From Pelomyxa schiedti (taxonomy: Eukaryota > Protista > Evosea): a DNA stretch of 64,000 bases. The notes beneath the pieces were generated by a model that worked only from the letters and a program-made list of their open reading frames with translations, made no database searches and had not been told where the DNA came from. Numbering within the stretch: the stretch's first letter is position 1; every line of letters starts with the position of its first letter. This document shows, piece after piece, positions 25,049 through 37,847 of the stretch. Location of the stretch: assembly GCA_020536535.1 (NCBI GenBank), contig JAHLWZ010000797.1, positions 62,001-126,000 of the forward strand. The letters run 5' to 3'. Position numbers and translations under genes: made by a program.

Positions 25049-28000
25049 CTAGTGGTACATTGGGTGTTGGGACTCCAACAAGTGTAAAAGGGTTGTACAG
25101 TTACTGCTACAGGAGCCGGGGAAATAAACATCATACCGTTGTTGTGTCTCTGTGCCTAGAATAATGTGAGAACTAGCTTGAAAATCTGGAGGAGGTACCT
25201 ATTTTTGAAAGGAATAGGCTAGAAGGTTCCGCTTGTGGCGGCAAGCTACTTATGAACACTCTTGGTACATCGGTTCCTACCTGTTTAAATTTTAGAAGCT
25301 GATGGGAGTGATTCGATATTGGAACCATGTTGGCCATAGCGGAAACAGTTGGCGGCAGGGAGGTTCCAAGAAGTATAAAAAGGTCACACTAGCGGTGCAT
25401 ATTAGTACTTTGGAATAACTAGGTTAGGTGGTTGTGCCTGGGAAATATCTTCATCCACAAGTTGAAAAAATCTACTTGGGAGTTGATCTCCAGTAAATAC
25501 AAGGTCTAAAGCGAAAGCTCAGTTAGGTGGAACTTAAAAGCCCTAGCTGACCTGGTTTGATTATTTCGTGACAATTGGTGCACAGTGGAACTTGGTCAAT
25601 GTCCAAACAACCTTCCTTAGTTAGAGAAAAGGCTAGGGTGTACTGAGTACTTTTTAGGTAATCGAAATTGTAACCCTTCCCACAGTAGATGCAAATCCCA
25701 CTGAGGAAAGAGCCATTGATGTGCACAATTTTTGAAAAAGGTATTCCTTACACTTTCATTAATTTCTTTCAAAGTAACACAGTACTGTCTTTTTTTCTAC
25801 CAGAAGAATACTCGAGCATATCAATGTTAGTTGTATACACTCTACATAATACATCCATATCAGATAATAATCTTGCCATATTATGTGCTGCTCCTGGCTT
25901 CATTTTTTGTTGTTTGTGACAAGTGGGTACTGCTGGAGAAGTCTTACACGTAATAGCCCTGGTGTAAGTAAGGCCCTTCCAAACGAATAAGCAGCCACAG
26001 GATTTTTCAAAAACGTTCTATTACCACAGTTATGACTTGTTTGAGGGTAGTTGTCTTGTGGTGCATCTATGCGAAACTACAGATTAGATACAAACTGTTT
26101 TTGAAAAAAGAGAGAGACATCAGATATTCCAAAGTGTTGTTGGAGGTCATCTTGAGAAATGGAGGTTAAGTCAGGCACTCCTGTCCCCTCACTTGCAAGT
26201 TCACCACTTTGGAGGATAATTATTAGTCCTTGCAGGGAAACAAGCTTGTTTGCATGTACATACATGACTACAACGATATTTTTAAACCGTGATTGTAATA
26301 TAGTACCAGCGACCTCATTCAATGTATTCAAAGTGAAATCTCGTTTGGTGGGTTGAAGTTTGAGAGTTTCTGATATCAATTGCTGTAATGTGATGTCATC
26401 TTAACACCTAGTAAGGAAAAAAACAATCACAAAATGGGTGAACGAACTTTCTTGTTCCTGTTTGTTTCTCAGGGTTTGCACAATGACATCAATTTCCTTT
26501 TAGGCGTGTTACAGACATGAGGGTAATTCATAATGTACCGATGACTCAGGCTTAAGGTTACATTGAGTGCACCTTAAGATTTTAAGTTGGCATAAATTTT
26601 GCGGGACACATACCATACAACGAAATCTTCGGTAAGGGCGAGTGTTATGTAGTGTGTGCTTTTTTGGGCGTGCACAGCCATATGACCTTGTTTCCCTTGG
26701 TCAGGAGGAGAACCTATGCTAACAGACGACGATGACGTTGGAGAAAGCCAATGAGAGAGAGATGAGCTGGTCTTCCTCAGTGAGAGTCTGTATGTAGGTG
26801 GAGCTCTCGAAGGTGGGGGAGGTGGGGGTGGGGGTGGAGGGGGAGGTGGAGGTGGAGGTGGGGGCACAGAGGGATTTGATGGATTTGCAATAGACTGTGA
26901 TGTGGAAAGTTGTGCGGAATCGGAAATTAATGGCAGTGGAAGTGAAGGTGACTGCGAAGGTGAAGGAGGTGTGTTTTGGAAAGATGAGGAGAGAGAAATG
27001 GTAATTGGTGGGGGGTCAGTTAAATCACTGGCCCTTAAATGAGGAGAAGAGGGAGGAGAAGAAAGGCGTAGCCTAGAGGTTCCACAGGCAATGTGACCAC
27101 ATTTCAAGCACAAAAGTAGTTGCTTTGTAGTACCACATTCTTTACAAGAGATGGATGCAACTGGACAAAAAGTTAGACATAACTTTTGGGTGTTTTTGGA
27201 CAGTATTGCCCCAACGTACGGCTAGCCAAAGGAATGCATTTTGACGGCGCCACCTGATGAGTGTGAGGGCATTTGGACCTTCTCAAGGGTGTGCGGGATT
27301 CCGTAGGAACTGTGCTGGTTCCTGCCTGGTGAGTAGAAGAAGCACCCGAGCTCGAGGCCGTCGACGCGGTGCTGGCTCCTGACTGACTATTACCCGGTGA
27401 TATGGAACCCGTACGGCGGAAAGTAGGAACAACGGTTCCCACCGATGCAAGCGTGGCGAAAGTCAACGGGGCCGCGTTCCCGGCATTCACGGCGTCCCTC
27501 TCTTTCTCAAGAATCTTCCTGCGAGCTTCCTTCGGGTTCATCGTCGGGTCGCAGTGCTTGCTGTCGGCCTCGGTCGGAATGGCCACCGGCGGCGGGGTGG
27601 TCGACGTCGCCGGCGCACTCACGGCATTGTTGGTACCGCCAGAGCCACTCGCCGCCGATGAAGAGGCAGAGGCAGAGGCAGAAGCGGCAGAAGCAGCCGC
27701 AGAACTTGTGGCGGCGGCGGCGAGCTGCTCGCGGGGCAGAGGGAGCGGCCTGGTGACCACAGGCCCGCTGGGGGTGACGCCCCCATTTGGCGGCAGGACC
27801 GCGGGAGACAGGGGAGGAGACTTCACGGTCGTTATTGGGGACGGCGGGGGGCTCCTGGCTGTGTGAGGGAGCGGGAGTTTGCGTATCCCGAAGGAGGACG
27901 GGAGGGCCGCGGAGGCTGAGGCCGAGGCGGAGGGGGAGGAGGAGGGGGAGGCCTCACCCTTAGAAGAGACGGAGGACGAGGCTGCTGCGGCGGCCGCGGC

Positions 28001-28165
28001 GGCAGTGAACAGCTTGATGTACTCGGCCATCTTGGGGGACGTCCCGGGGCTCGCTGTCCTCACTGCGGGGTGGGAACTGGAGGTTGTAGTATTAGATACG
28101 GTCGCGCTAGACAGCGACGGCACCGGCGCCGGCGAGGGCGTGGCTCGCCTCCCACGCGTTGTCAT
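25049..28165 (-). CDS. ZnF-UBP + Sir2 (class I-like) sirtuin, apparently catalytically inactive
   Basis: Ser/Ala-rich N-terminus. ZnF-UBP: CKECGTTKQLLLCLKCGHIACG...GHMAVHAQKSTH. Sir2 domain: GELASEGTGVPDLTS, TTNIDMLE, IVHINGSF, CIYC...CTNC, KP|DLVFTGD, CDLFILLGTSL and DVPRVFI. Confidence 0.85.
26812..26864 (-). repeat. Poly-proline-encoding triplet repeat
   Basis: GGN triplets on the + strand encode a run of about 18 Pro on the - strand. Confidence 0.9.
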
Positions 28166-28342: not shown

Positions 28343-31300
28343 ATGGACGACGAGCGGCAGGGTGACGAAGTTCTGAGGGGACTTCTTACGGAATTGAGAA
28401 CCGAGAGGCAGGTAATTGGTGTCAAGGGGGCGTTGGACAGGTTGGTGCAGTGGTGCGCCGGGCAAAGCGGATCGAAAAATGCGGATCTGTCTGGTGCCGT
28501 GTGGAGGTGGACTAAGATTGCCGGAGATGCGACTTGTTGTTTGTTGCATGTGGTGTTGGTTGACTGGAGGGCATGCCTTACTGCAAGAGAGAGGAAGGCG
28601 CTCTTTGACGACTTGTTCAATGTTTGGATGTCACATTTGGGACTGTGGATTGGGTTGAATTCTGCAGCGATCTTGCCTGCGGAATTGACTTGTACAATTT
28701 CTTTCTTTTCTTTTTTTTCTCCGTCTAGAATGACGCACTTCTGTGACAGACAATCAAAGACAAGACATTATGGATTACCTTGTTGAACTTCTTCGTGGCT
28801 TCATCGGGGAAGAGAATACTGCCTCCGGCTCGCGCTTCTGTGGCTTGATTGAAGACCTCTTGACGCTAGACGATGCTGGAAAACTGTCTAAAAATCTGGA
28901 TTCGGATGCGCTTTGGTCCCATGTGTTAATGTGTATTGGCACCATTCCTACAAGGGTCTTTAACGTGATGAGTGAAAGGGCACCCCTCTTTGTTCAGAAT
29001 AAGTCAGTTTGCCGCGCCTTGTAATTCCCTATAACTGGATGCAGGGAGTGGACGAGACGGATCAGTTTGCAGTGCTGTCTGCTTCTTAAAAAGTACAGCA
29101 CCAGCCAAGCAAAGCCACAATTATGTGTACTTGTTGGGAAAATACTTGGAAGACTCTGCCGGCTTGGATGCCCAGGCATGTTACCTACCTCTGTTTCTCT
29201 GGAGTTGTGAGTCTGGCCTCATGTGATGGTGTGGTCTGCTTTTTGTCTTATCCCACTGTGCATGTGACCATTTTCTGAGCACGCACTAACTTGCATCTTC
29301 TCCCTTTCAAATGCACTACAAAGAGTGTGCAGCAGCGCCTATAATCAGTCTCCTTGAATCAAGTACACATAAAATCACTCTTTTGCCAGCAGTGCTGGAG
29401 CATGTACCGGACTCTGAGCTGGAAAACATCACGGGCGCTCTTCTTCTCCAATCACGTGGTAAAAAAAAATAGCAGGAACTTATTTGGGTGTAATTGCATG
29501 CAGAAACAACAAATGTGTCACTCACTGAAGCTCTATCTCAGTTACGGGACCGCAAGCACTTCAAATTCTTGCTTGTCAATAAGTTCACTCTAGTTCGAGT
29601 GTTTCCTATCAGTGTGATAAAGATATTATGTGGGGTGATTATGAAGTGTGGTTTCATTCCTTTATCTCTGGAGGCTATACTTAAAGCTTGGAGCACATCC
29701 ACATTTGTAACTCACTGCCCTCTTGAACAGCATGCTTGTAATCTCCCCCGTCTATCACCCTTCATGACTGTTGACCTTTGTTCAGACATTAATTTCCTTC
29801 TCCTTGAAATTATGCAACTTGCGCTGGAGAGTGAGGTTACAGCGAGAATAGCTTTAATCTTAGAAGGCATACAAGTTCACATGTACAACTCCACTAGTGA
29901 AATAAAGATCATGGGTCTGGTGAGATCCCACCCTTCTCTCGTTTGGTCTAACACAAACAGAAAGTGGCTGAAGCTCTGTCAATCATAATGCATAAGCCAA
30001 TTACTTTTTCAGAGCTTCACCGAGAAAAGGAGAGTGCCTCTAAGCCACCCTCCTCTGAGAGCAGCACTGTCAATACTCCTCTTGAACCAACTAATTCACC
30101 TGTGAGTAAGCCTTCTGCTGATAACCATGAGAAACCCAAGCACAAAAAATGTTCCCTTTCTCTGTTGTAAAATGAAGTAACCAGCAACAAAAGTGATCGA
30201 GGTGGACCCAGATGAAGTTGTAAATCTTAGTGACCCAGGTATCCAATCTCATTTGGACTTTAATTAAACTAAATCAAATTCCAGAGTACGAAAGTGAGGA
30301 AGAAGATGGCCCTGCAGAGGAAGACCAAGGAAAACTGTGTTCAAATGGAGACGAGTTTCAGCCTTACGATCTGACTGATGACAAGTCGGACCTTGCACCT
30401 TTCAAGACCCCAAAGTCAGTCTTTTAGTTCCCCTTTGAAACTTTTGCATGGAAGCGTGCAAAGTAAATGAGCACCCAGGTATATTCGGCAAGCATACGCC
30501 CTTCTACAGGAGCACTCTGATGACCTTGATGCCACCTTGGCGGCACTCAAATCTATTATTGCAATTTCAAAAGAGAAGCCACACGCACTAGGTTCCTCTG
30601 CAAAAACCCAAAGATCCATCATTTTAATAATAAATAACCAGTGGAACTTGCTGAGAAGCTCACAATGGCCGTTCTTCACGTTAGTAACAAGTGGAGTTGC
30701 CCGGAAATCAAGCCATTGAGAAACCAGGCCCTTCTTTCACTTGCTGTAATGTGTCCCGATGTGACTCCTGGGTTTGTTTTGCGTTCACCTTGATCCATCT
30801 CACCCCCTACCAGCGTCCTTGTATCTCTTTTTTACAACTCGTCAAGCACTAATTATGACCGAGAAATTATTCTCACAACCCTCAGCGACGCTGCTGACCA
30901 ACTCAGTGGCAGCCAGAAGGTACCTTAGGCATCACTCTTTTCCACTCCACCTGAACGTTTTCCAAATAATAGAAAGAGGCGCAATCAGCACCCCAAGCAC
31001 CGCCTCGCCCATTAATTGAGGAAGTTGTACATGACAATAAACTCCCCACAGAGATGATAATTGGTCAATCAACACGAAGATGGCACAAGAAGCCATCCAC
31101 ACCTCCTGTTATCATACACAATCAGCTCCTGCCTATTGTGCACCAAATTTTCTATCCTATGCTGCAAAATTATGATAAGCATATGTGTGTATACTGTGCC
31201 CATTCGTGGCCAAATTTAACTTCAAAGTAGACCTACATTGGACCTTCTTTCAGAAGGTGCACTTCTATCCCACTTTACCCTAGTAATGGGAAACATCCTT

Positions 31301-31761
31301 TGCAATTCAGGTTAGTACTTGATTTTTTTTGTTGTCTCCTAAACTATGACCACTAGAAAACTCTCCCAGTTTTGTTCACATGTGCCTGTGTATGCTTGAT
31401 TTCCTCTATGCTATACACAGGCACAAAGAACCTTCTGTAAGACGCTGCATACTTGTTACTCTACACAGGTGGGAAAATTTCAACTTTTATGCTTTTAATT
31501 CTTGATGCAGGATTTTGTGCCTTTGCTCCCCTCGGGTGATTGCCACAGAATTGTCACGTAAACTCGGCCCTTTTGAGCCATGGCTTCAAGGTGGGAAGGG
31601 ATAAACAAACTGATGGCACTACTAATATACACTCAGATGTCACAAATCCAACTACAGGGGACCCTGATCCCGATTGTTGCTTTTTTGCTACCAAAGTTCT
31701 TGGTGTATTGGAGGCCAAACTTCATGTATTAGTGCGAGCACCAGACACTGATTCACTTTGA
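28343..31761 (+). CDS. TELO2: Telomere length regulation protein TEL2 (TTT complex)
   Basis: Multi-exon HEAT-like protein with DEFQPYDLTDD and the C-terminal GDPDPDCCFFATKVLGVL motif characteristic of TEL2. Confidence 0.8.
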
Positions 31762-31876
31762 CCACAGTTTTGGATCCATTTTTCTAATTCATACAATAAT
31801 TGGCGCCAATCCCCGGCATTTACGAACTCTTAGCACCTCAATTCCTATGTACAAATTATAACATAAAATCGAGGAA

Positions 31877-32199
31877 ATGCAGCAGAAGGAAATGGCTGAC
31901 ATTGCAGTGCTGTTGACAGAGCTTGGTGTGAGACCGAACTTTTTTGAGTTGTGGTTTGTTCTCATCCAACAAAAGAAAAGAAACAATCTCGGTTGTTGCA
32001 ATGTGAAGAGATGCTTCTACAAGCAAACAAGGCTCTGGATCTTGGCGTGTCAGTTCTTGTTGCGGCCACTCAAGCCATGTGGGACGAGATTTGCGGTGAC
32101 AAGCCCAAACCTGATGAAATGGGAAACCCAGCGATCCAACCAACCAAGGTTGTACCACCTCCCTCATCCTCCAATCTCGCCCAATCCGTGGAAGAGTGA
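31877..32199 (+). CDS. Small (~90 aa) coiled-coil protein
   Basis: One in-frame GT-AG intron gives MQQKEMADIAVLLTELEKKQSRLLQCEEMLLQANKALDLGVSVLVAATQAMWDEICGDKPKP...SVEE*. Confidence 0.6.
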
Positions 32200-32339
32200 C
32201 ATGCCCCACAAACATCCAATACCCCGAAAGCCGCCAAACAGGCGGTTTTTTTCATTTCAAATAAACAGCAAACGGCGAACAAGCCAAGGAGGCCACACAA
32301 AACATTCGAAACCAAACCAAACAAAGTTTCAAATAAACA

Positions 32340-34641
32340 ATGAGTACAGAAGCCCCACCAAGCACCGTTTGTGCTACTTCGACGTGCTCTGCCACAGCAA
32401 CTAGCGCGTCTGCATCTGCGTCTGCGTCTGCGTCGGCGTCGGCGTCGGCGACGCACGTTGGTGCTAGTGTTCACGGCGACGCGAGTAGCAACGCGCCGCC
32501 ACGTCATAGCGCCGATCTGCCAAAGACACTGAGACGTATTCAACTGCCACCTGGGAAGCCATGCAAGTTGTGTGAGCTGAGGTCACACGAGATTGTACTA
32601 ATGGAGGTCTGTGGCACGCCCACCCAACATTCACTAAAATTGTCTAACTGGCTTTTCCACCTGTTTTTTTTTTTTTTTTTTACCTCTAGAACTGCAAAGA
32701 CAACAAAATCCTTCTTAGAATGAATCAAAGGCTGTCAATGATTGTGTTTGTTAATTGCGAGTATGTATTTTAGGAAACCTAATTCCTGTAAACAACACTC
32801 TCTTTAGAAATTGTATTGTGAAACTTTTGGACTCTGCTCTTTTGACGTCTAGGACTACTCGCCTCATCAATTGCAGAAATTGTGAATTCGTGTTTGAGGG
32901 TATGTTCTTATTGTAAGGTCTTTTCTAACTAGGAAGGTAGATATCGATTCTCGTAAAGTAGAATGTTTTGGGTTACAAGAGAATCGGCTGGTTTTCATTG
33001 GTGACACTGTGTTGCTTGAGTCCCAAGTTGTTATTTTCCGTGATGGTCAGTGAATACAATCCTAGTTGATGACTTAACTCTTTGCTAGGGTGTGTAGGCA
33101 ACCGGATTGCTACAGCAGAGATAACCAGCAACGAGATCATTGATATCACTTATGATGTATCTTCCTTGTGGAGTACTCCAGTACGTAACAAAATACTAGA
33201 TAGAGAAAGTTGTCGAAGTACCTCCTAGTGATAGTGACCAGTGGGTTGGTTACCTGGACCAAGCAAGAAATATCAATTTCGTTCGCTTGACCGAGTCTGG
33301 AGCCTTTAATCCGGTTGGTGAAGGTCTATTGTTATGGTCTAACTCAAATTTAGGTGGGTGCAGCTCATATTCAAAAACTCCTACCCTTCATACAAGCATC
33401 CCTTCCCGGAGATGATGCATTTAACCAGCCAACTGCCCGTGTCACAGCACAACAAATTCTTGATGCCCTAGAAGTGGTAGCCAAAGTTCCCAAGGTTGAC
33501 GAGGAACTAATCAGTATGGCATACGATGCTGAAAGGAGAGAGTATCATGAACCGCTGGAATCTGTGAAAGCCAAAGTCTATATTAAAATATAATTCGCCA
33601 CTTCTCAATCCTCTCTAGGCAAAGATTGTAGCTGATATGATACTGGCATCGAAGCATACAGTTGTGTATTCAGGTGCTGGCATAAGTACCAGCTCGGGTG
33701 GGTACAAGGCTTCTCAGTTAACCATTTAAATGTACTTAAGGAATTGGCGATTTCCGGGGACCGACTGGCCTGTGGACTTGCCAAGATAAGGTAAATGCTT
33801 TTTTGTCTCCTTTACTTTATGGGTTATCAATGACAATCACTAGGGAATTCATGTTAAAAGTAAAACATACAAAGAAGTTGAACCAACGTATGCTCACTAC
33901 GCCATTACTGCTCTGGCAAAGCGGCAGCTGGTGCATTTTATCTTCACCACAAATGTTGACGGGTTACATCTTCGCAGGTATCTTCAGTTTCATAGGTTTT
34001 ATTGTTTTGATAACGTCACAGTGGTATGCCGATGCATATGGTTGTGGAAATTCATGGCTCTTGCTACAGGGAAGTTTGCAAGAATTGCAAAAAGGTCGAA
34101 ATTCCAGTAATACTTGGAGACCTTATTTTCCCAAGGTGTTTATGCGGGACTACGATATCTGGAATGATTCCGTGCAATCTTACACAAACCATTGGACAGG
34201 GCGGTACTGCGACTTCTGTGGCGGCAATCTCCTAGATACCGGCGTTGCCTTCGGAGAAACATACAGAGACCCACTTGATGCAGTCAAATCTACCTACCAC
34301 GCAAGGAAAGCCACACTGGCAATAATTCTTGGCACCTCCATGAACGTCCAGAGCTCCGCATCCTACCCAGAAAAGGTACGTGACATTCTCCCATAACACA
34401 GCTCATTTACCAAAAACCACAGTGCCTTAGGAACAATGGACACATGGTTCTCGTCAACCTCCAGGCCACACCTTATGACGCAGTCATGCAACAAGAGGGC
34501 AATGTGCGTGTTTGGGCCCCCATTGACCAGTTCCTCAGTCTTGTTGCCGAGCACCTGTCACTGGATGTTCCTATGATAACTGACATAAGACCTCAGTGGC
34601 ATGAGCCTGAACCCCAGAAGGGTTGGTGTAACATACTTTAA
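32340..34641 (+). CDS. SIRT6/7-type (class IV) sirtuin with N-terminal C-CAP/CARP-like beta-helix and C-terminal CaaX
   Basis: Intron 33576-33618 joins EYHEPLESVKAK to AKIVADMILASKHTVVYSGAGISTSSG|IGDFRGPTGLWT. Downstream motifs TTNVDGLH, EIHGS, CKNC...CDFC, FGE and LGTSM. The protein ends QKGWCNIL*. N-terminal repeats: MENCKDNKILL, FVNCENCIVKL and LINCRNCEFVF. Confidence 0.9.
32404..32450 (+). repeat. Hexamer repeat (GCGTCT/GCGTCG)n encoding Ala-Ser
   Basis: Directly visible tandem repeat in the first exon of the class IV sirtuin gene. Confidence 0.85.
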
Positions 34642-34779
34642 GAGGGAGGGTTCCTACTGTAAACCCTTGATAACCACGGATACAACAGATTGGCCGTAGA
34701 ACCGCTGTCATTCTAACCTCACTCAGACTGAGGCAGGAAAAATACTAAAAGGATGGATTCACACCCAACAGATTTTTTT

Positions 34780-35998
34780 TTATTCTGTTGTCCTTGCTCC
34801 ATCATGGGCCTTCTCTTCCTGGGAGGGTGTGGTAGTTGTGGAGATGGGTTCAGATGTGGTTGTGGTTTCACAGTTTGATGTTTGTTTTGTGGGGGATTGG
34901 TGTGTATCAGTTTCTGGAATTGGGAGGTGTTGAGAGTTGTCTTCTTTTTGCCTGGTTCCAACCTTTTTCTGCTTTGGCTTGAGCTTCCTCACTTTTGACA
35001 ATTGGCCATGTCCTACTTGTATATCAACAAGCAGTCGGAATGGCTTCAAAACCGCATCAACAATGGAAGGGTTTTGGTCCAGTGCCGATACACAGAAGGC
35101 AACTGCTTCACATGTGGACAAACCATTAGGAATCTCCTTCCGTATTCGATATTCAGATAGCGGTGGCTTGGCAAAGGCAACCTTTTTTTTTTCCTGGTGA
35201 GTAACAAATACCATTATGAAATATAGGTGTAAGGACCACACACCCTTCTCAGAGCTTTTAATTCGGGATTAAACCGAAGCAACCTGTCGGTCTGGTACCA
35301 AGTGCCATCCAGAACAAACAAATTGAAGATGGAACTGTTGCTCACAGTGGTATCAATTATGTTGCCCGTCTCATGCTCTCTCAAGTCTGAATCTGTTGCA
35401 TGGCAGAGACTCTCGGTGGATTGTGTTGTGTGATGTGATAGCTGCTGTTCCTCCGGTTGTGAGTTTGGTTGGGGCGGTGAATTTAGTGACAAGGAATCGA
35501 ACTGCTCTGCGAGGATATTTGGCTCAATGGCCCCATCACCGGGGTACAAGAGGAGTGCATTTGGTTGTTTCATCAGTTCACAAACATGTGAAGGTAGAGA
35601 ATGCAGGTGTCTTGTGACAAATACATCGACATATTTGAGTGCAAGTTGTATGAGGAATACTGTGTTTTTGCTGGATTTTGTTTCCACTGGATGCTGTGTA
35701 AGGAGTTAAATGGTGTACGAAATCAACATTAGATATAGTTTTACACAACTGTTTAGAAAGGTGGTTTTACTTGCAGAATGAAAATATGCGTCCTAGTTTC
35801 TAAGGGCTCAGGAGGAAGTGCACGACACAAACAAACGCTGATTGCCCGTCTTCATCCCGTTAAAAGAAGAAAGAATACAAAACAAAAGGGTTTTGTGTAC
35901 TTGCACTTCCCACAAGTAGGTCTTTTGGGCTTGGGGGTGCTCGCGGCAGTGGTGGGCTCCGGCAGCGGGAGAGGGAGCTCAGGAGTTTCGTCTCCCAT
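34780..35998 (-). CDS. DTWD2: DTW-domain tRNA-uridine aminocarboxypropyltransferase (DTWD2/TapT-like)
   Basis: CGKCK|RAISVCLC, LLLYPG, LFVLDGTW, SEYRIRKE and GLSTCEAVA motifs. Confidence 0.9.
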
Positions 35999-36054
35999 CA
36001 CGATCAAACGGGCAAGTTTCTCTCGATTTTTTCTTATTAAATTGTTGTCTGGGC
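35999..36054. promoter_or_regulatory. Candidate minimal bidirectional promoter/5'UTR region between the DTW and HAT1 genes
   Basis: Only 56 bp separate the divergent ATGs at 35998 (-) and 36055 (+). Confidence 0.5.
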
Positions 36055-37847
36055 ATGGCCGACGGCGGGCTTGGGGCGATGTCGTTGTCGACAGCGTCGT
36101 GCACTACGACTACGCGGAGAGACCCTTTTACTTGTGTGGCCAACGATGTCATTCACATGAAATTCGGTGTGTTGGCTGAGCGAGGATCGGATCCGGCTGT
36201 TTTTTTTTTTTCTTTTAACTTGCAATCTTGCATTGTGCAGTCAGAAGGAGGGAGGATATTGATGACGAGTCAACTACTTTCCACCCCGAGTACACACATC
36301 AAATTGTGAGCGAGGATCAGCAGATCAGAGGGTACAGTGACCTAAAAGTTTTGTTGTATTACACGCCGTCGGCTAGCACATGTTATTTTGCCGTGTCTTT
36401 TAGAGAGCGCACTTCTGGTTTTTTTTTTTCTTTTTTCTCCCCTCTCGCTTCTCACAGAATTTAGATGCGGTGGATATCTGGAACTTGATACGCCAAATAA
36501 TGCCTGAAACTGCTCGTCTTGCCGGCAGTGTAGACGAATTTTTAGCAGTACCTTTCTTCTTTTGGAGTGTCACGTCACTTTTCCTCAGGCTGTAGAACAA
36601 GAGCAGATGGGTGGCAAATTCAAACCCCCAGGACACCAAGTCCACGAATACACATTTGCAAGAAATTCCACCCCCTTGACAACTTCTGATTCCTCCCACC
36701 AACTACCACCACCATCACCAACAAAAATTCCGAGTCCCTCTGACGAAACATTTGCTGTTCATTTTTCATCAATTGCGGATGATCCCAAAGCTGTGGCATA
36801 TCATAGTATAATTCAACCGTTTGTGCTCTGGTTTATTGATAATAGTAGCTTCATAAAGACTGAAGAACCCGGGTGGAGACTTTTCACAATGTAACCTTTT
36901 CCCTCCCACTAAAACTTCCAAACATACTGCAGATTCAAAAAAACAGAGGGTTTAAAAGTTGGGGAATATTCTTATCAAATTATTGGATTTTCCACTGGCT
37001 ACATGTTTTACCATCCATGGGGAAAAGCCCGCTTACGTGTAAGGTTGGCCACTAAGTTTTTGCTAATACCTAAAGTGCTGCTTTTCCCACAGCCAGTTCA
37101 TGATTTTTCCGCCTTTTCAGCGCTCGGGGCATGCAAGTACCTATGCCGCCCTAAATGGCTGTAGCCTAACACACCACAGCACAGTTACTGCGCGCAATTT
37201 ACAATGTTGTCAGAGCTGACCCAACAATTGTAGATGTCACAGTTGAAGGTATTAACAAGTCAATGAAACAAAAAATTGGAGTGGGTTGGGGTAACCACAA
37301 CTTACACTTTAACCAATTTGAAGATGCCTCAGATGAGCTCACGTATCTTGTGCCAGTCTCATGTTCTTGTTCTTAATTTTATTTTTTGCAAAGCCGGGTT
37401 AGAGATTTACTGGACCTGCACGACCTCCAGGAATCTGGCTTCTGGCCCGTACTGCAACAAGCACCAAAGCTTACCCGCGAGGCATATGCCACCCTGAGGG
37501 AGCGTTTAAAGCTCTGCTGGGTATTCAAATAGTTTAGCATTACACACTAACCCCTTCCAATAAAGATACAAGCAAAGCGCTGTCACACTATCCTCAGACT
37601 GAAGTATGCCAAAGAGCAGCATGACGAGTCTGTAAGCCGGCAGCTGCGCCTCTACTACAAGACAGTTTTGTACTGGACACTCAAACAACAACACACCAAG
37701 GGCAGCTCACAACAGACATCACGCCGGTCACAGCAGAACACCGAGGCAACCACTGGTGAGAACTTAAAATTGCAGCTTCACCAAATGTGGCTAGAAGTGG
37801 AAAGAGAGTTCAATGAACTATTGGAAATCGTCCAATCAAAAATGTAG
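36055..37847 (+). CDS. HAT1: Histone acetyltransferase type B catalytic subunit
   Basis: FHPEYTHQI, QIRGYSDL, QPFVLWFIDNSSFI, QFMIFPPFQRSGH and VDVTVE motifs. The last exon ends KM* (TAG 37845-37847). Confidence 0.9.

What the first reader, a model, noticed from the sequence alone, without database searches (positions are those of the whole stretch)
32340..34641. SIRT6/7-type sirtuin fused to a CARP beta-helix and ending in a CaaX prenylation box
Seen: an in-frame intron joins an N-terminal domain with NCxNC-type repeats to an intact class IV sirtuin, and the ORF ends KGW-CNIL*. Established: CaaL is a geranylgeranyltransferase-I signal, C-CAP/cofactor-C beta-helices occur in actin- and tubulin-associated proteins, and SIRT6 removes long-chain acyl groups. 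Known SIRT6/7 proteins are largely nuclear. Inference: this could be a membrane-anchored, cytoskeleton-linked deacylase, an architecture I do not recognise.
Basis: partly seen in the sequence, partly recalled or inferred. Interest (0 to 1): 0.72.

Follow-up and report, generated by a model that had tools for sequence, protein, structure and literature searches.

The report
Lipid-tailed CARP-sirtuin fusion gene of an amoeba
This is a real, expressed 13-exon gene of the anaerobic amoeba Pelomyxa schiedti that joins a CAP-like beta-helix (CARP) domain to an intact SIRT6/7-type sirtuin. The pairing is already published for sponges, but this copy ends in a lipid-anchor signal, and its amoebal family often carries membrane anchors.

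Summary
This gives one open frame of 577 codons from 32340 to 34641 that ends KGW-CNIL-stop, with no splice after the stop.

The C-terminal half is a class IV sirtuin: catalytic His, four zinc Cys and the GAGxS and DFRG motifs are present. The usual QNxD motif reads TNVD, as in the whole family.

The N-terminal domain gets no Pfam hit exon by exon. The same domain of the closest paralogue (about 60% identical) models at pLDDT 92 as a CAP-type CARP beta-helix: VIA-align Z 13.8 to CAP1, 8.7-10.4 to TBCC and RP2.

The architecture is not new. Gold and Sinclair (2022) described CAP-C plus Sir2 as animal "SIR8". This scan also noted another CARP-sirtuin on a different contig of this genome.

Two things are new:
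- An amoebozoan subfamily of about 35 proteins, with at least 9 copies in P. schiedti.
- In that subfamily, 4 proteins end in CaaX and 10 in a tail-anchor helix, against 9 of 175 other sirtuins.

The CNIL box is absent from the three closest paralogues, so prenylation is plausible (about 55%) but unproven. A link to actin or tubulin is untested.

The parts
32340..32606 (+). Exon 1 (aa 1-89). Inferred ATG at 32340, a low-complexity (SA)n stretch, and the first strand of the CARP domain from about 32577.
   Evidence: ORF and frame. RNA covers only 32553-32606. Paralogues align from model aa 26. The family domain HMM starts at model aa 80.
32690..32760 (+). Exon 2 (CARP coil, ends ...VNC-E)
   Evidence: The joint 32760|32808 is in an X1 contig. 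Intron 1 is implied by the contig length. 74% identical to P0001.
32808..32899 (+). Exon 3 (CARP coils, with the NC..NC pairs and the LDSA motif that is invariant in the family)
   Evidence: Joints. tblastn to paralogues. Alignment A1.
32941..33045 (+). Exon 4 (CARP coils)
   Evidence: Joints. 67% identical to P0001.
33089..33156 (+). Exon 5 (CARP). It ends at 33156, not 33180.
   Evidence: The RNA joint 33156|33200 skips 43 nt, GT..AG.
33200..33313 (+). Exon 6 (end of the CARP domain)
   Evidence: An X1 contig reaches 33311. An X3 contig starts at 33268 and joins 33312|33353.
33354..33575 (+). Exon 7 (helical linker and start of the first sirtuin helix)
   Evidence: Joints in X2 and X3. The linker is helical and confident in the paralogue model.
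33619..33697 (+). Exon 8. Holds the NAD-binding GAGISTSS motif at 33673-33696.
   Evidence: Joints 33575|33619 and 33696|33740. Alignment.
33741..33790 (+). Exon 9 (IGDFRGP motif; Gly in place of the usual Pro)
   Evidence: alignment.
33844..33977 (+). Exon 10. Holds TNVD at 33949-33960, where the family has Thr for the usual Gln of QNxD.
   Evidence: Pfam SIR2, E 3.4e-5. Family invariants.
34022..34094 (+). Exon 11. Catalytic His codon at 34053-34055 and the first zinc CxxC at 34077-34088.
34136..34375 (+). Exon 12. Second zinc CxxC at 34208-34219 and the GTSM motif.
   Evidence: Pfam SIR2, E 5.6e-4. SIRT7 is the only PDB hit, 1.5e-4. 154 relatives.
34423..34641 (+). Exon 13. VNLQ motif, last helix, flexible tail, CaaX-type box CNIL at 34627-34638, stop TAA at 34639-34641.
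   Evidence: Joint 34373|34421 in X1-X3. Contigs are identical to the window through the stop. Translation.
34642..34764 (+). 3' untranslated region, at least to 34764, unspliced
   Evidence: X2 contig to 34764 and X3 contig to 34717.

Best explanation
The locus is one expressed gene of Pelomyxa schiedti for a protein of about 577 residues.

Anatomy, in order:
- a disordered N-terminal stretch of about 80 residues;
- a right-handed beta-helix of the CAP-C/CARP type;
- a helical linker of about 60 residues;
- a class IV (SIRT6/7-like) sirtuin with all catalytic, NAD-binding and zinc-binding residues except a family-wide Gln-to-Thr change;
- a flexible tail of about 25 residues ending Cys-Asn-Ile-Leu.

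Family: it belongs to a mostly amoebozoan subfamily of CARP-sirtuin fusions related to the animal 'SIR8' kind. It arose by recent duplication within Pelomyxa.

Inferred mechanism:
- The sirtuin removes acyl groups from lysines using NAD+.
- The CARP domain, packed against it, selects the partner or substrate. Actin, tubulin and an Arl-type GTPase are the known CARP clients.
- The terminal Cys is geranylgeranylated by GGTase I, then trimmed and methylated, which holds this copy on a membrane.
- Other family members reach membranes through a tail-anchor helix or N-myristoylation.

Shown: the gene model, the domains, family membership, the motif, and the presence of the prenylation enzymes.

Inferred: enzyme activity, prenylation, membrane location and the client of the CARP domain.
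For: - Gene model: splicing and the last exon come from RNA contigs. The frame is a continuous 577 codons.
- Sirtuin: SIR2 Pfam hits on exons 10 and 12. Motifs are intact in alignment with SIRT6 and paralogues. The paralogue's sirtuin domain hits SIRT6 at 7.5e-48 and SIRT7 at 1.2e-44, against 2.4e-28 or weaker for other classes.
- N-domain homology: the N-terminal exons are homologous to the N-domains of 26 or more proteins. The family HMM hits the local spliced model at 1e-50.
- N-domain fold: the domain model has pLDDT 91.9. Foldseek top hit is CAP1 C-terminus, E 1e-4. VIA-align gives Z 13.8, 13.4 and 13.3 to CAP CARP domains, 8.7-10.4 to TBCC and RP2, and 7.6 or less to unrelated beta-helices. 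ESM Atlas CAP_C clusters match at TM 0.71-0.78.
- Whole protein: the full-length paralogue model has pTM 0.80 with a disordered C-terminal tail.
- Species: paralogues are named Pelomyxa schiedti in NCBI.
- Tree: the gene is sister to P0152 inside a P. schiedti-only clade.
- Anchors: 4 CaaX and 10 tail anchors among 35 family proteins, against 9 of 175 other sirtuins, Fisher p = 3e-7.
- Prenylation machinery in the genome: three prenyltransferase beta loci, alpha-repeat loci and ICMT.
Against: - The three closest paralogues (P0152, P0001, P0151) and the Mastigella co-orthologue P0004 lack CaaX, so the box is young or fortuitous. No strict orthologue from another species was found to test conservation.
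- There is no polybasic stretch and no second Cys upstream of CNIL (sequence).
- About 2% of unrelated sirtuins in my set also end CxxX.
- The anchor enrichment is not corrected for shared ancestry. With the window gene left out, CaaX alone gives p = 0.056.
- Pfam CAP_C and TBCC do not hit this gene's exons. The fold evidence comes from a paralogue.
- The Gln of QNxD is Thr, with unknown effect on catalysis.
- The 5' end is unconfirmed.
Confidence: 0.6

Rival explanations
1. Same gene and domains, but the CNIL ending is a chance or very recent ending that is not prenylated. The protein would be soluble (cytosolic or nuclear) like its closest paralogues.
For: P0152, P0001, P0151 and Mastigella P0004 have no CaaX. 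P0152 has a Cys at the aligned place followed by 15 more residues. There is no polybasic or palmitoyl second signal (sequence). 3 of 175 unrelated sirtuins end CxxX.
Against: CNIL fits the GGTase-I rules (aliphatic a2, X = Leu) and sits on a Pro/Gly-rich tail that is disordered in the paralogue model. CaaX arose at least three times in the family and is kept in two diverged sister proteins, P0013 and P0161. Ten further members carry tail anchors. The enzymes are encoded.
Confidence: 0.35
2. The CARP domain works like RP2 or TBCC, as a GTPase-activating or binding module for an Arl2/3-type GTPase, or for tubulin, rather than like CAP on actin.
For: TBCC and RP2 are clear structural matches, Z 8.7-10.4. 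Seven of 26 family domains give weak Pfam TBCC hits. RP2 is itself lipid-anchored (established knowledge). One member carries a Rho-GTPase-binding PBD domain.
Against: CAP CARP domains match better: Z 13-14 with rmsd 2.2-3.2 and Atlas CAP_C TM 0.71-0.78. No Arg is invariant in the family domain; the invariant residues are Asp-Ser, and Asn and Val are nearly so. An RP2-like arginine finger is therefore not evident.
Confidence: 0.15
3. The sirtuin domain is not a deacylase. Because of the family-wide TNxD in place of QNxD, and Gly for Pro in IPDFRG, it would act mainly as an ADP-ribosyltransferase or as a non-catalytic NAD or acyl-lysine reader.
For: Thr-Asn-x-Asp is invariant in 30 family members. 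This copy and its Pelomyxa paralogues have IGDFRG. SIRT6 and SIRT4 have ADP-ribosyltransferase activity (established knowledge).
Against: The catalytic His, the Asn and Asp of the motif, GAGxS, Arg of DFRG, the four zinc Cys, GTS and VNLQ are all kept under strong conservation. This argues for a working NAD-dependent enzyme.
Confidence: 0.15
4. Two separate genes or transcripts (a CARP protein and a sirtuin) were wrongly merged.
For: No single RNA contig spans exon 1 to exon 13. A cDNA 5' end with a template-switch oligo lies at 33248 in X2.
Against: The X3 contig runs from exon 6 (CARP) through all joints to the 3' UTR. The X1 contig runs from exon 1 to exon 6, and the two overlap. There is no stop in the spliced frame. 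The same fusion occurs in more than 30 proteins, including complete transcriptome ORFs of Mastigella, Mastigamoeba, Physarum and Balamuthia.
Confidence: 0.03

Closest known systems
Animal SIR8 (Gold and Sinclair 2022, Mol Biol Evol, PMC9486876): class IV sirtuin with an upstream CAP-C (PF08603) domain in sponges, corals and jellyfish
   Same: The domain order is the same: a CAP-C/CARP beta-helix, then a class IV Sir2 domain. Sponge members (Ephydatia P0210, Corticium P0268) align over the full length with amoebal CAP_C-sirtuins.
   Different: The window gene sits in a different, mostly amoebozoan clade, and the backbone between the clades is unresolved. Its CARP domain is too diverged for Pfam. 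The paper sampled no Amoebozoa and dated SIR8 to the animal stem. No lipid or membrane anchor is described there.
Human SIRT6 and SIRT7 (class IV sirtuins)
   Same: They are the best solved-structure matches by sequence. The catalytic His, the zinc site and the NAD motifs are shared. SIRT6 removes long-chain fatty acyl groups from lysine (established knowledge).
   Different: SIRT6 and SIRT7 have no CARP domain and no CaaX, and they are nuclear or nucleolar. They have QNxD where this family has TNxD.
CAP/Srv2 C-terminal CARP domain (PDB 1k8f, 1k4z, 6fm2)
   Same: It is the best fold match to the family N-domain: Z 13.1-13.8 with 116-122 residues aligned.
   Different: Sequence identity is only 8-15%. 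The domain is at the N-terminal side of an enzyme instead of the C-terminus of CAP. There are no WH2 or HFD parts. Actin binding is untested.
RP2 and TBCC (CARP-domain Arl2/3 GAPs; RP2 is N-terminally acylated and membrane-bound)
   Same: They share the CARP beta-helix fold, Z 8.7-10.4. The idea of a lipid-anchored CARP protein is also shared.
   Different: The structural match is weaker than to CAP. There is no invariant arginine in the family domain. The anchor is at the other end and of another chemistry.
Other CARP-sirtuin of the same genome (scan note s1-411111; probably P0104, KAH3745828.1)
   Same: It is from the same organism and has the same pairing of CAP-like domain and class IV sirtuin.
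   Different: It is in a different subfamily.

Membership tests
Class IV (SIRT6/7-type) sirtuin | Sir2 catalytic domain detectable by profile | tested here: met
   PF02146 on exon 10 (E 3.4e-5, 24.3 bits) and exon 12 (5.6e-4) by reference. Paralogues score 83-93 bits.
Class IV (SIRT6/7-type) sirtuin | Closer to SIRT6/7 than to classes I-III | tested here: met
   Exon 12 alone hits only SIRT7 in the PDB. The sirtuin domain of the closest paralogue hits SIRT6 at 7.5e-48 and SIRT7 at 1.2e-44, against 2.4e-28 or weaker for others.
Class IV (SIRT6/7-type) sirtuin | Catalytic His, GAGxS, DFRG Arg, Asn and Asp of QNxD, four zinc Cys | tested here: met
   All are present in the exon translations and aligned with SIRT6. 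They are invariant in 30 family members.
Class IV (SIRT6/7-type) sirtuin | Gln of the (S/T)QNxD motif | tested here: not met
   The motif reads TTNVD (33946-33960). Thr is invariant in the family. The consequence is unknown.
SIR8 (CAP-C + Sir2, Gold and Sinclair 2022) | CAP-C/CARP domain upstream of the Sir2 domain | tested here: met
   Met by fold, through the paralogue domain that is 58% identical. Pfam PF08603 itself does not reach this gene's exons.
SIR8 (CAP-C + Sir2, Gold and Sinclair 2022) | Falls in one clade with sponge and cnidarian SIR8 | tested here: inconclusive
   In the sirtuin-domain tree the sponge proteins and the window's subfamily are separate supported clades on an unresolved backbone (quick search, SH-aLRT only).
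SIR8 (CAP-C + Sir2, Gold and Sinclair 2022) | SIR8-specific motif of about 9 residues | not testable with these tools
   The motif is given only in a supplementary figure and is not in the text I could read.
CARP / C-CAP-cofactor C beta-helix | Right-handed parallel beta-helix superposable on CAP, TBCC and RP2 | tested here: met
   pLDDT 91.9. Z 13.8 to CAP1, 10.4 to TBCC, 8.9 to RP2, and 7.6 or less to unrelated helices. The test was done on paralogue P0152:135-305, not on this gene's own joined sequence.
CARP / C-CAP-cofactor C beta-helix | Binds G-actin (CAP) or acts on Arl GTPase or tubulin (RP2, TBCC) | tested here: inconclusive
   No experiment was possible. No invariant Arg for a GAP finger was found. 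The complex prediction gave no answer.
CaaX prenylation substrate (GGTase I) | Cys at -4, aliphatic a2, X = Leu or Phe, at the true C-terminus | tested here: met
   C-N-I-L then TAA at 34627-34641. RNA contigs pass the stop unspliced.
CaaX prenylation substrate (GGTase I) | Flexible, exposed linker before the box | tested here: met
   The tail is Pro/Gly-rich (sequence). The equivalent tail of the paralogue model has pLDDT below 50.
CaaX prenylation substrate (GGTase I) | Prenyltransferase and processing enzymes encoded by the organism | tested here: met
   Three beta-subunit loci, alpha-repeat loci and ICMT loci. Which beta is GGTase I was not resolved.
CaaX prenylation substrate (GGTase I) | Box conserved in orthologues | tested here: inconclusive
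   It is absent in the three nearest paralogues and in Mastigella P0004. It is present in Balamuthia P0010 (CQLF) and in P0013 (CLVQ) and P0161 (CVIF). No strict orthologue was found.
CaaX prenylation substrate (GGTase I) | Actual lipid attachment | not testable with these tools
   This needs labelling or mass spectrometry.

The most novel reading that the evidence does not exclude
CARP-sirtuin fusions are an old eukaryotic family, present in Amoebozoa, Heterolobosea, a cercozoan and sponges, so older than the animal stem proposed for SIR8. Their amoebal branch would be a set of membrane-tethered class IV sirtuins that reach the membrane by tail anchor, CaaX or myristoylation. At the membrane they would remove acetyl or fatty-acyl groups from lysines of cortical proteins such as actin or small GTPases. 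The window gene would be the geranylgeranylated member in Pelomyxa.
Probability: 0.3. Interest if true: 0.7.

Novelty: new variant of a known kind. Interest (0 to 1): 0.45.

Why it matters
Class IV sirtuins are studied as chromatin enzymes. SIRT6's strong defatty-acylase activity has few known membrane clients.

A family in which the same catalytic core is fused to a CAP-like domain and repeatedly given a membrane anchor would point to a non-nuclear, cortex-directed role. Three anchoring chemistries are seen: tail anchor, CaaX and myristoyl. That role would be directly testable, for example with a Cys-to-Ser mutant, deacylase assays and CARP pull-downs.

The finding also moves the origin of the published 'SIR8' architecture, or of its convergent twins, well outside animals. 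The published survey held no Amoebozoa.

For this single gene, the value is that of a clean, expressed example. It is not a new kind of system.

Tried and rejected
(1) Pfam on exons 2-7 by reference gave nothing. Six-frame scans of the genome with CAP_C and TBCC did not hit this locus. A profile of the N-domain against PDB sequences gave only chance LIM hits. Sequence methods alone therefore do not name the domain.

(2) Complex prediction of the paralogue CARP domain with a P. schiedti actin exon (L005:172-1200, which lacks about 30 N-terminal residues) gave no answer, score 0.00. This is no evidence either way.

(3) My first sequence-only splice sites for introns 5 and 6 were wrong and were replaced by the RNA joints.

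(4) Three word searches did not return this gene's own annotated protein, so I had no protein id for it.

(5) Joined step left out. The spliced 577-residue model was never sent to Pfam, HMMER libraries, structure prediction, fold search or any database tool. Those steps were done exon by exon by reference, or on paralogue P0152. The joined model was built only inside local scripts from window.fa. There it was used for length and frame, blastp, phmmer and hmmsearch against proteins already fetched, and two trees.

(6) The idea of an RP2-like arginine finger was considered. A hand alignment puts the 'VDxR..EC' Arg near RP2 Arg118, but that Arg is not conserved in the basal clade and no residue-level superposition was available.

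(7) P0146 and P0244 (ZnF-UBP sirtuins of P. schiedti) are not the other sirtuin-like gene of this window.

(8) Literature searches for a prenylated, CaaX, tail-anchored or amoebozoan CARP sirtuin found nothing relevant.

Full report
**What is there.**
Reading the + strand from 32340 gives short coding blocks in changing frames, separated by GT..AG introns of 40-83 nt. I laid three single-cell RNA runs (X1-X3, one sample) and one DNA run (X4) on 31200-36200.

- The RNA contigs carry joints at 32760|32808, 32898|32940, 33044|33088, 33156|33200, 33312|33353, 33575|33619, 33696|33740, 33788|33842, 33974|34019, 34091|34133 and 34373|34421. All are GT..AG on the + strand.
- Intron 1 (32607-32689) lies at a poly-T tract that the tool skipped. 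It is implied by the 523-nt length of the X1 contig that runs from 32553 to 33311.
- The RNA corrected two of my own splice calls. Intron 5 is 33157-33199 and intron 6 is 33314-33353.
- With these 13 exons the frame is open for 577 codons and ends KGWCNIL-TAA.
- X2 and X3 contigs continue unspliced to 34764 and 34717, so the CNIL ending is the real C-terminus of the mRNA seen.
It is 43 nt long and would bring a stop if retained.

There are two weak points. No RNA covers 32340-32552, because a template-switch oligo marks a cDNA end at 32553. And exon 1 to exon 13 is bridged by two overlapping contigs, not by one.

**Organism.**
Earlier notes of this scan name the genome as Pelomyxa schiedti. 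This is borne out by NCBI names of the paralogues. It also fits the 2021 and 2023 single-cell runs of one study.

**The sirtuin half.**
- Pfam SIR2 hits exon 10 (3.4e-5) and exon 12 (5.6e-4).
- Exon 12 alone finds 154 relatives among 1.8 billion representatives. In the PDB it finds only SIRT7.
- The sirtuin domain of the nearest paralogue hits SIRT6 at 7.5e-48 and SIRT7 at 1.2e-44, far ahead of other classes.
- In alignment, GAGISTSS, DFRG, the catalytic His (34053-34055), both CxxC pairs, GTS and VNLQ are present.
- Two departures: IGDFRG for IPDFRG, seen in the Pelomyxa clade, and TNVD for QNxD.
- The Thr is invariant in all 30 aligned family members. It is therefore a family trait, not decay.

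**The N-terminal half.**
Exon-wise Pfam and genome-wide CAP_C and TBCC scans do not touch this locus. The exons are nonetheless clearly homologous to the N-terminal parts of many 500-680-residue sirtuins. A profile of 26 such domains (A1) hits the locally spliced model at 1e-50 over residues 80-216.

A joined sequence has no reference, so I folded the same domain of the closest paralogue (P0152:135-305, 58% identical in the domain) with the family alignment.

- The model has pLDDT 91.9 and pTM 0.86, and is all-beta.
- Foldseek puts CAP1's C-terminal domain first, E 1e-4.
- VIA-align gives Z 13.8 (1k8f), 13.4 (2b0r), 13.3 (6fm2, the CARP domain on ADP-actin, rmsd 2.2 over 116 residues) and 13.1 (1k4z).
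- TBCC then scores 10.4-8.7 and RP2 8.9. Unrelated beta-helices score 7.6 or less.
- ESM Atlas CAP_C clusters match at TM 0.71-0.78.
- Seven of 26 members give weak TBCC Pfam hits and four give CAP_C hits, best 3e-6.

The full-length paralogue model (pLDDT 80, pTM 0.80) shows a disordered N-terminus, the helix domain, a helical linker, the sirtuin and a disordered last 20 residues.

**Is the architecture new?**
No.
- Gold and Sinclair (2022) named a class IV family 'SIR8'. About half of its sponge, coral and jellyfish members have a CAP-C domain upstream of Sir2.
- Precomputed Pfam annotations show PF08603 plus PF02146 on many proteins.
- This scan had already noted another CARP-sirtuin on a different contig of this genome.

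What the paper did not have is Amoebozoa. Named members here come from:
- Amoebozoa: Balamuthia, Mastigamoeba, Mastigella, Pelomyxa sp., Physarum, Pyxidicula, Protostelium, Stenamoeba and Flabellula;
- the cercozoan Apiculatamorpha;
- Naegleria and Willaertia, by full-length similarity;
- the sponges Ephydatia and Corticium.

In a sirtuin-domain tree the window gene lies in a supported, mostly amoebozoan subfamily. The sponge proteins form another clade, and the backbone is unresolved. I therefore call it SIR8-like, not SIR8.

Within the subfamily the gene is sister to P0152, in a clade of four P. schiedti paralogues, with Mastigella next. P. schiedti has at least nine copies of the subfamily.

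**The CaaX box.**
CNIL meets the sequence rules for GGTase I and sits on a flexible tail. The genome encodes three prenyltransferase beta loci, alpha repeats and ICMT.

Against a function:
- None of the three nearest paralogues, nor Mastigella P0004, ends in CaaX.
- No second membrane signal is present.

For a function, the family pattern:
- Balamuthia P0010 ends CQLF.
- Two diverged sister proteins end CLVQ (after a Lys-rich stretch) and CVIF.
- Ten others end in a hydrophobic tail-anchor helix followed by basic residues. These include P. schiedti P0282 and proteins of Physarum, Pyxidicula and Protostelium.
- Several members start MG..., which suggests myristoylation.
The odds ratio is 12 and p = 3e-7.
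- That test has no correction for relatedness. CaaX alone without the window gene gives p = 0.056.

I read this as a family that is often membrane-tethered, in which this young copy gained a CaaX. I put prenylation at about 55%.

**Mechanism.**
Shown: one mRNA, the two domains, intact catalytic residues, the motif, and the presence of the prenylation enzymes.

Inferred:
- NAD-dependent lysine deacylation, possibly of long-chain acyl groups as in SIRT6.
- Partner choice by the CARP domain.
- Membrane attachment by geranylgeranyl.

The actin link is only a fold resemblance. A complex prediction with a truncated actin gave no answer.

**Verdict.**
This is a new variant of a known kind and is moderately interesting. 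The interest lies mainly in the family-wide membrane-anchor pattern and in the pre-animal spread of CARP-sirtuins.

Noticed in passing
window 25049-28165: An earlier scan note (s1-377999) reports a second sirtuin-like gene, a ZnF-UBP 'pseudo-sirtuin', only about 4 kb upstream of this gene's start. The ZnF-UBP sirtuins P0146 and P0244 of P. schiedti do not map there.
   Followed up: partly
window 31231-31799 and 34815-35693: Both neighbouring genes are expressed and spliced in the same RNA runs. The upstream + strand gene has GT..AG introns at about 31309-31354 and 31466-31507, and its frame ends at TGA 32197-32199. The downstream - strand gene has a CT..AC intron at about 35180-35241.
   Followed up: no
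window 32400-32450 and 32653-32690: Exon 1 holds a GCGTCT/GCGTCG repeat that encodes (Ser-Ala)n. Intron 1 holds a run of about 18 T. RNA contigs stop short of the first (cDNA 5' end at 32553) and the reads tool skipped the second.
   Followed up: no
window 33396 and 34147: Two variants lie within the gene. G>C at 33396 (Ala to Pro in the linker) is in the DNA run X4 only. G>A at 34147 (CGG to CGA, silent) is in X1 RNA and X4 DNA. Both look like allelic or strain differences.
   Followed up: partly
P0051, P0217, P0235, P0146 (proteins): The same sirtuin radiation carries other N-terminal modules. P0051 has a Rho-GTPase-binding PBD/CRIB before the CARP domain. P0217 and P0235 have Kelch repeats. 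P0146 has ZnF-UBP plus a weak CAP_C hit.
   Followed up: no
P0086 (Pyxidicula), P0122 (Flabellula), P0205, P0230: In these sirtuins the CARP-like domain lies after the Sir2 domain, not before it. The pairing therefore exists in both orders.
   Followed up: no
G000, many contigs: The P. schiedti assembly gives at least 88 actin-family matches at E <= 1e-20. About 19 of them are near-identical-scoring conventional actin exons, which is a very large actin gene family.
   Followed up: no
P0163 (P. schiedti), P0024, P0272, P0034: Several family members begin Met-Gly with Ser or Thr at position 6, or with Cys nearby (for example MGGIFCC). This suggests N-myristoylation or palmitoylation as a third anchoring route.
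   Followed up: no
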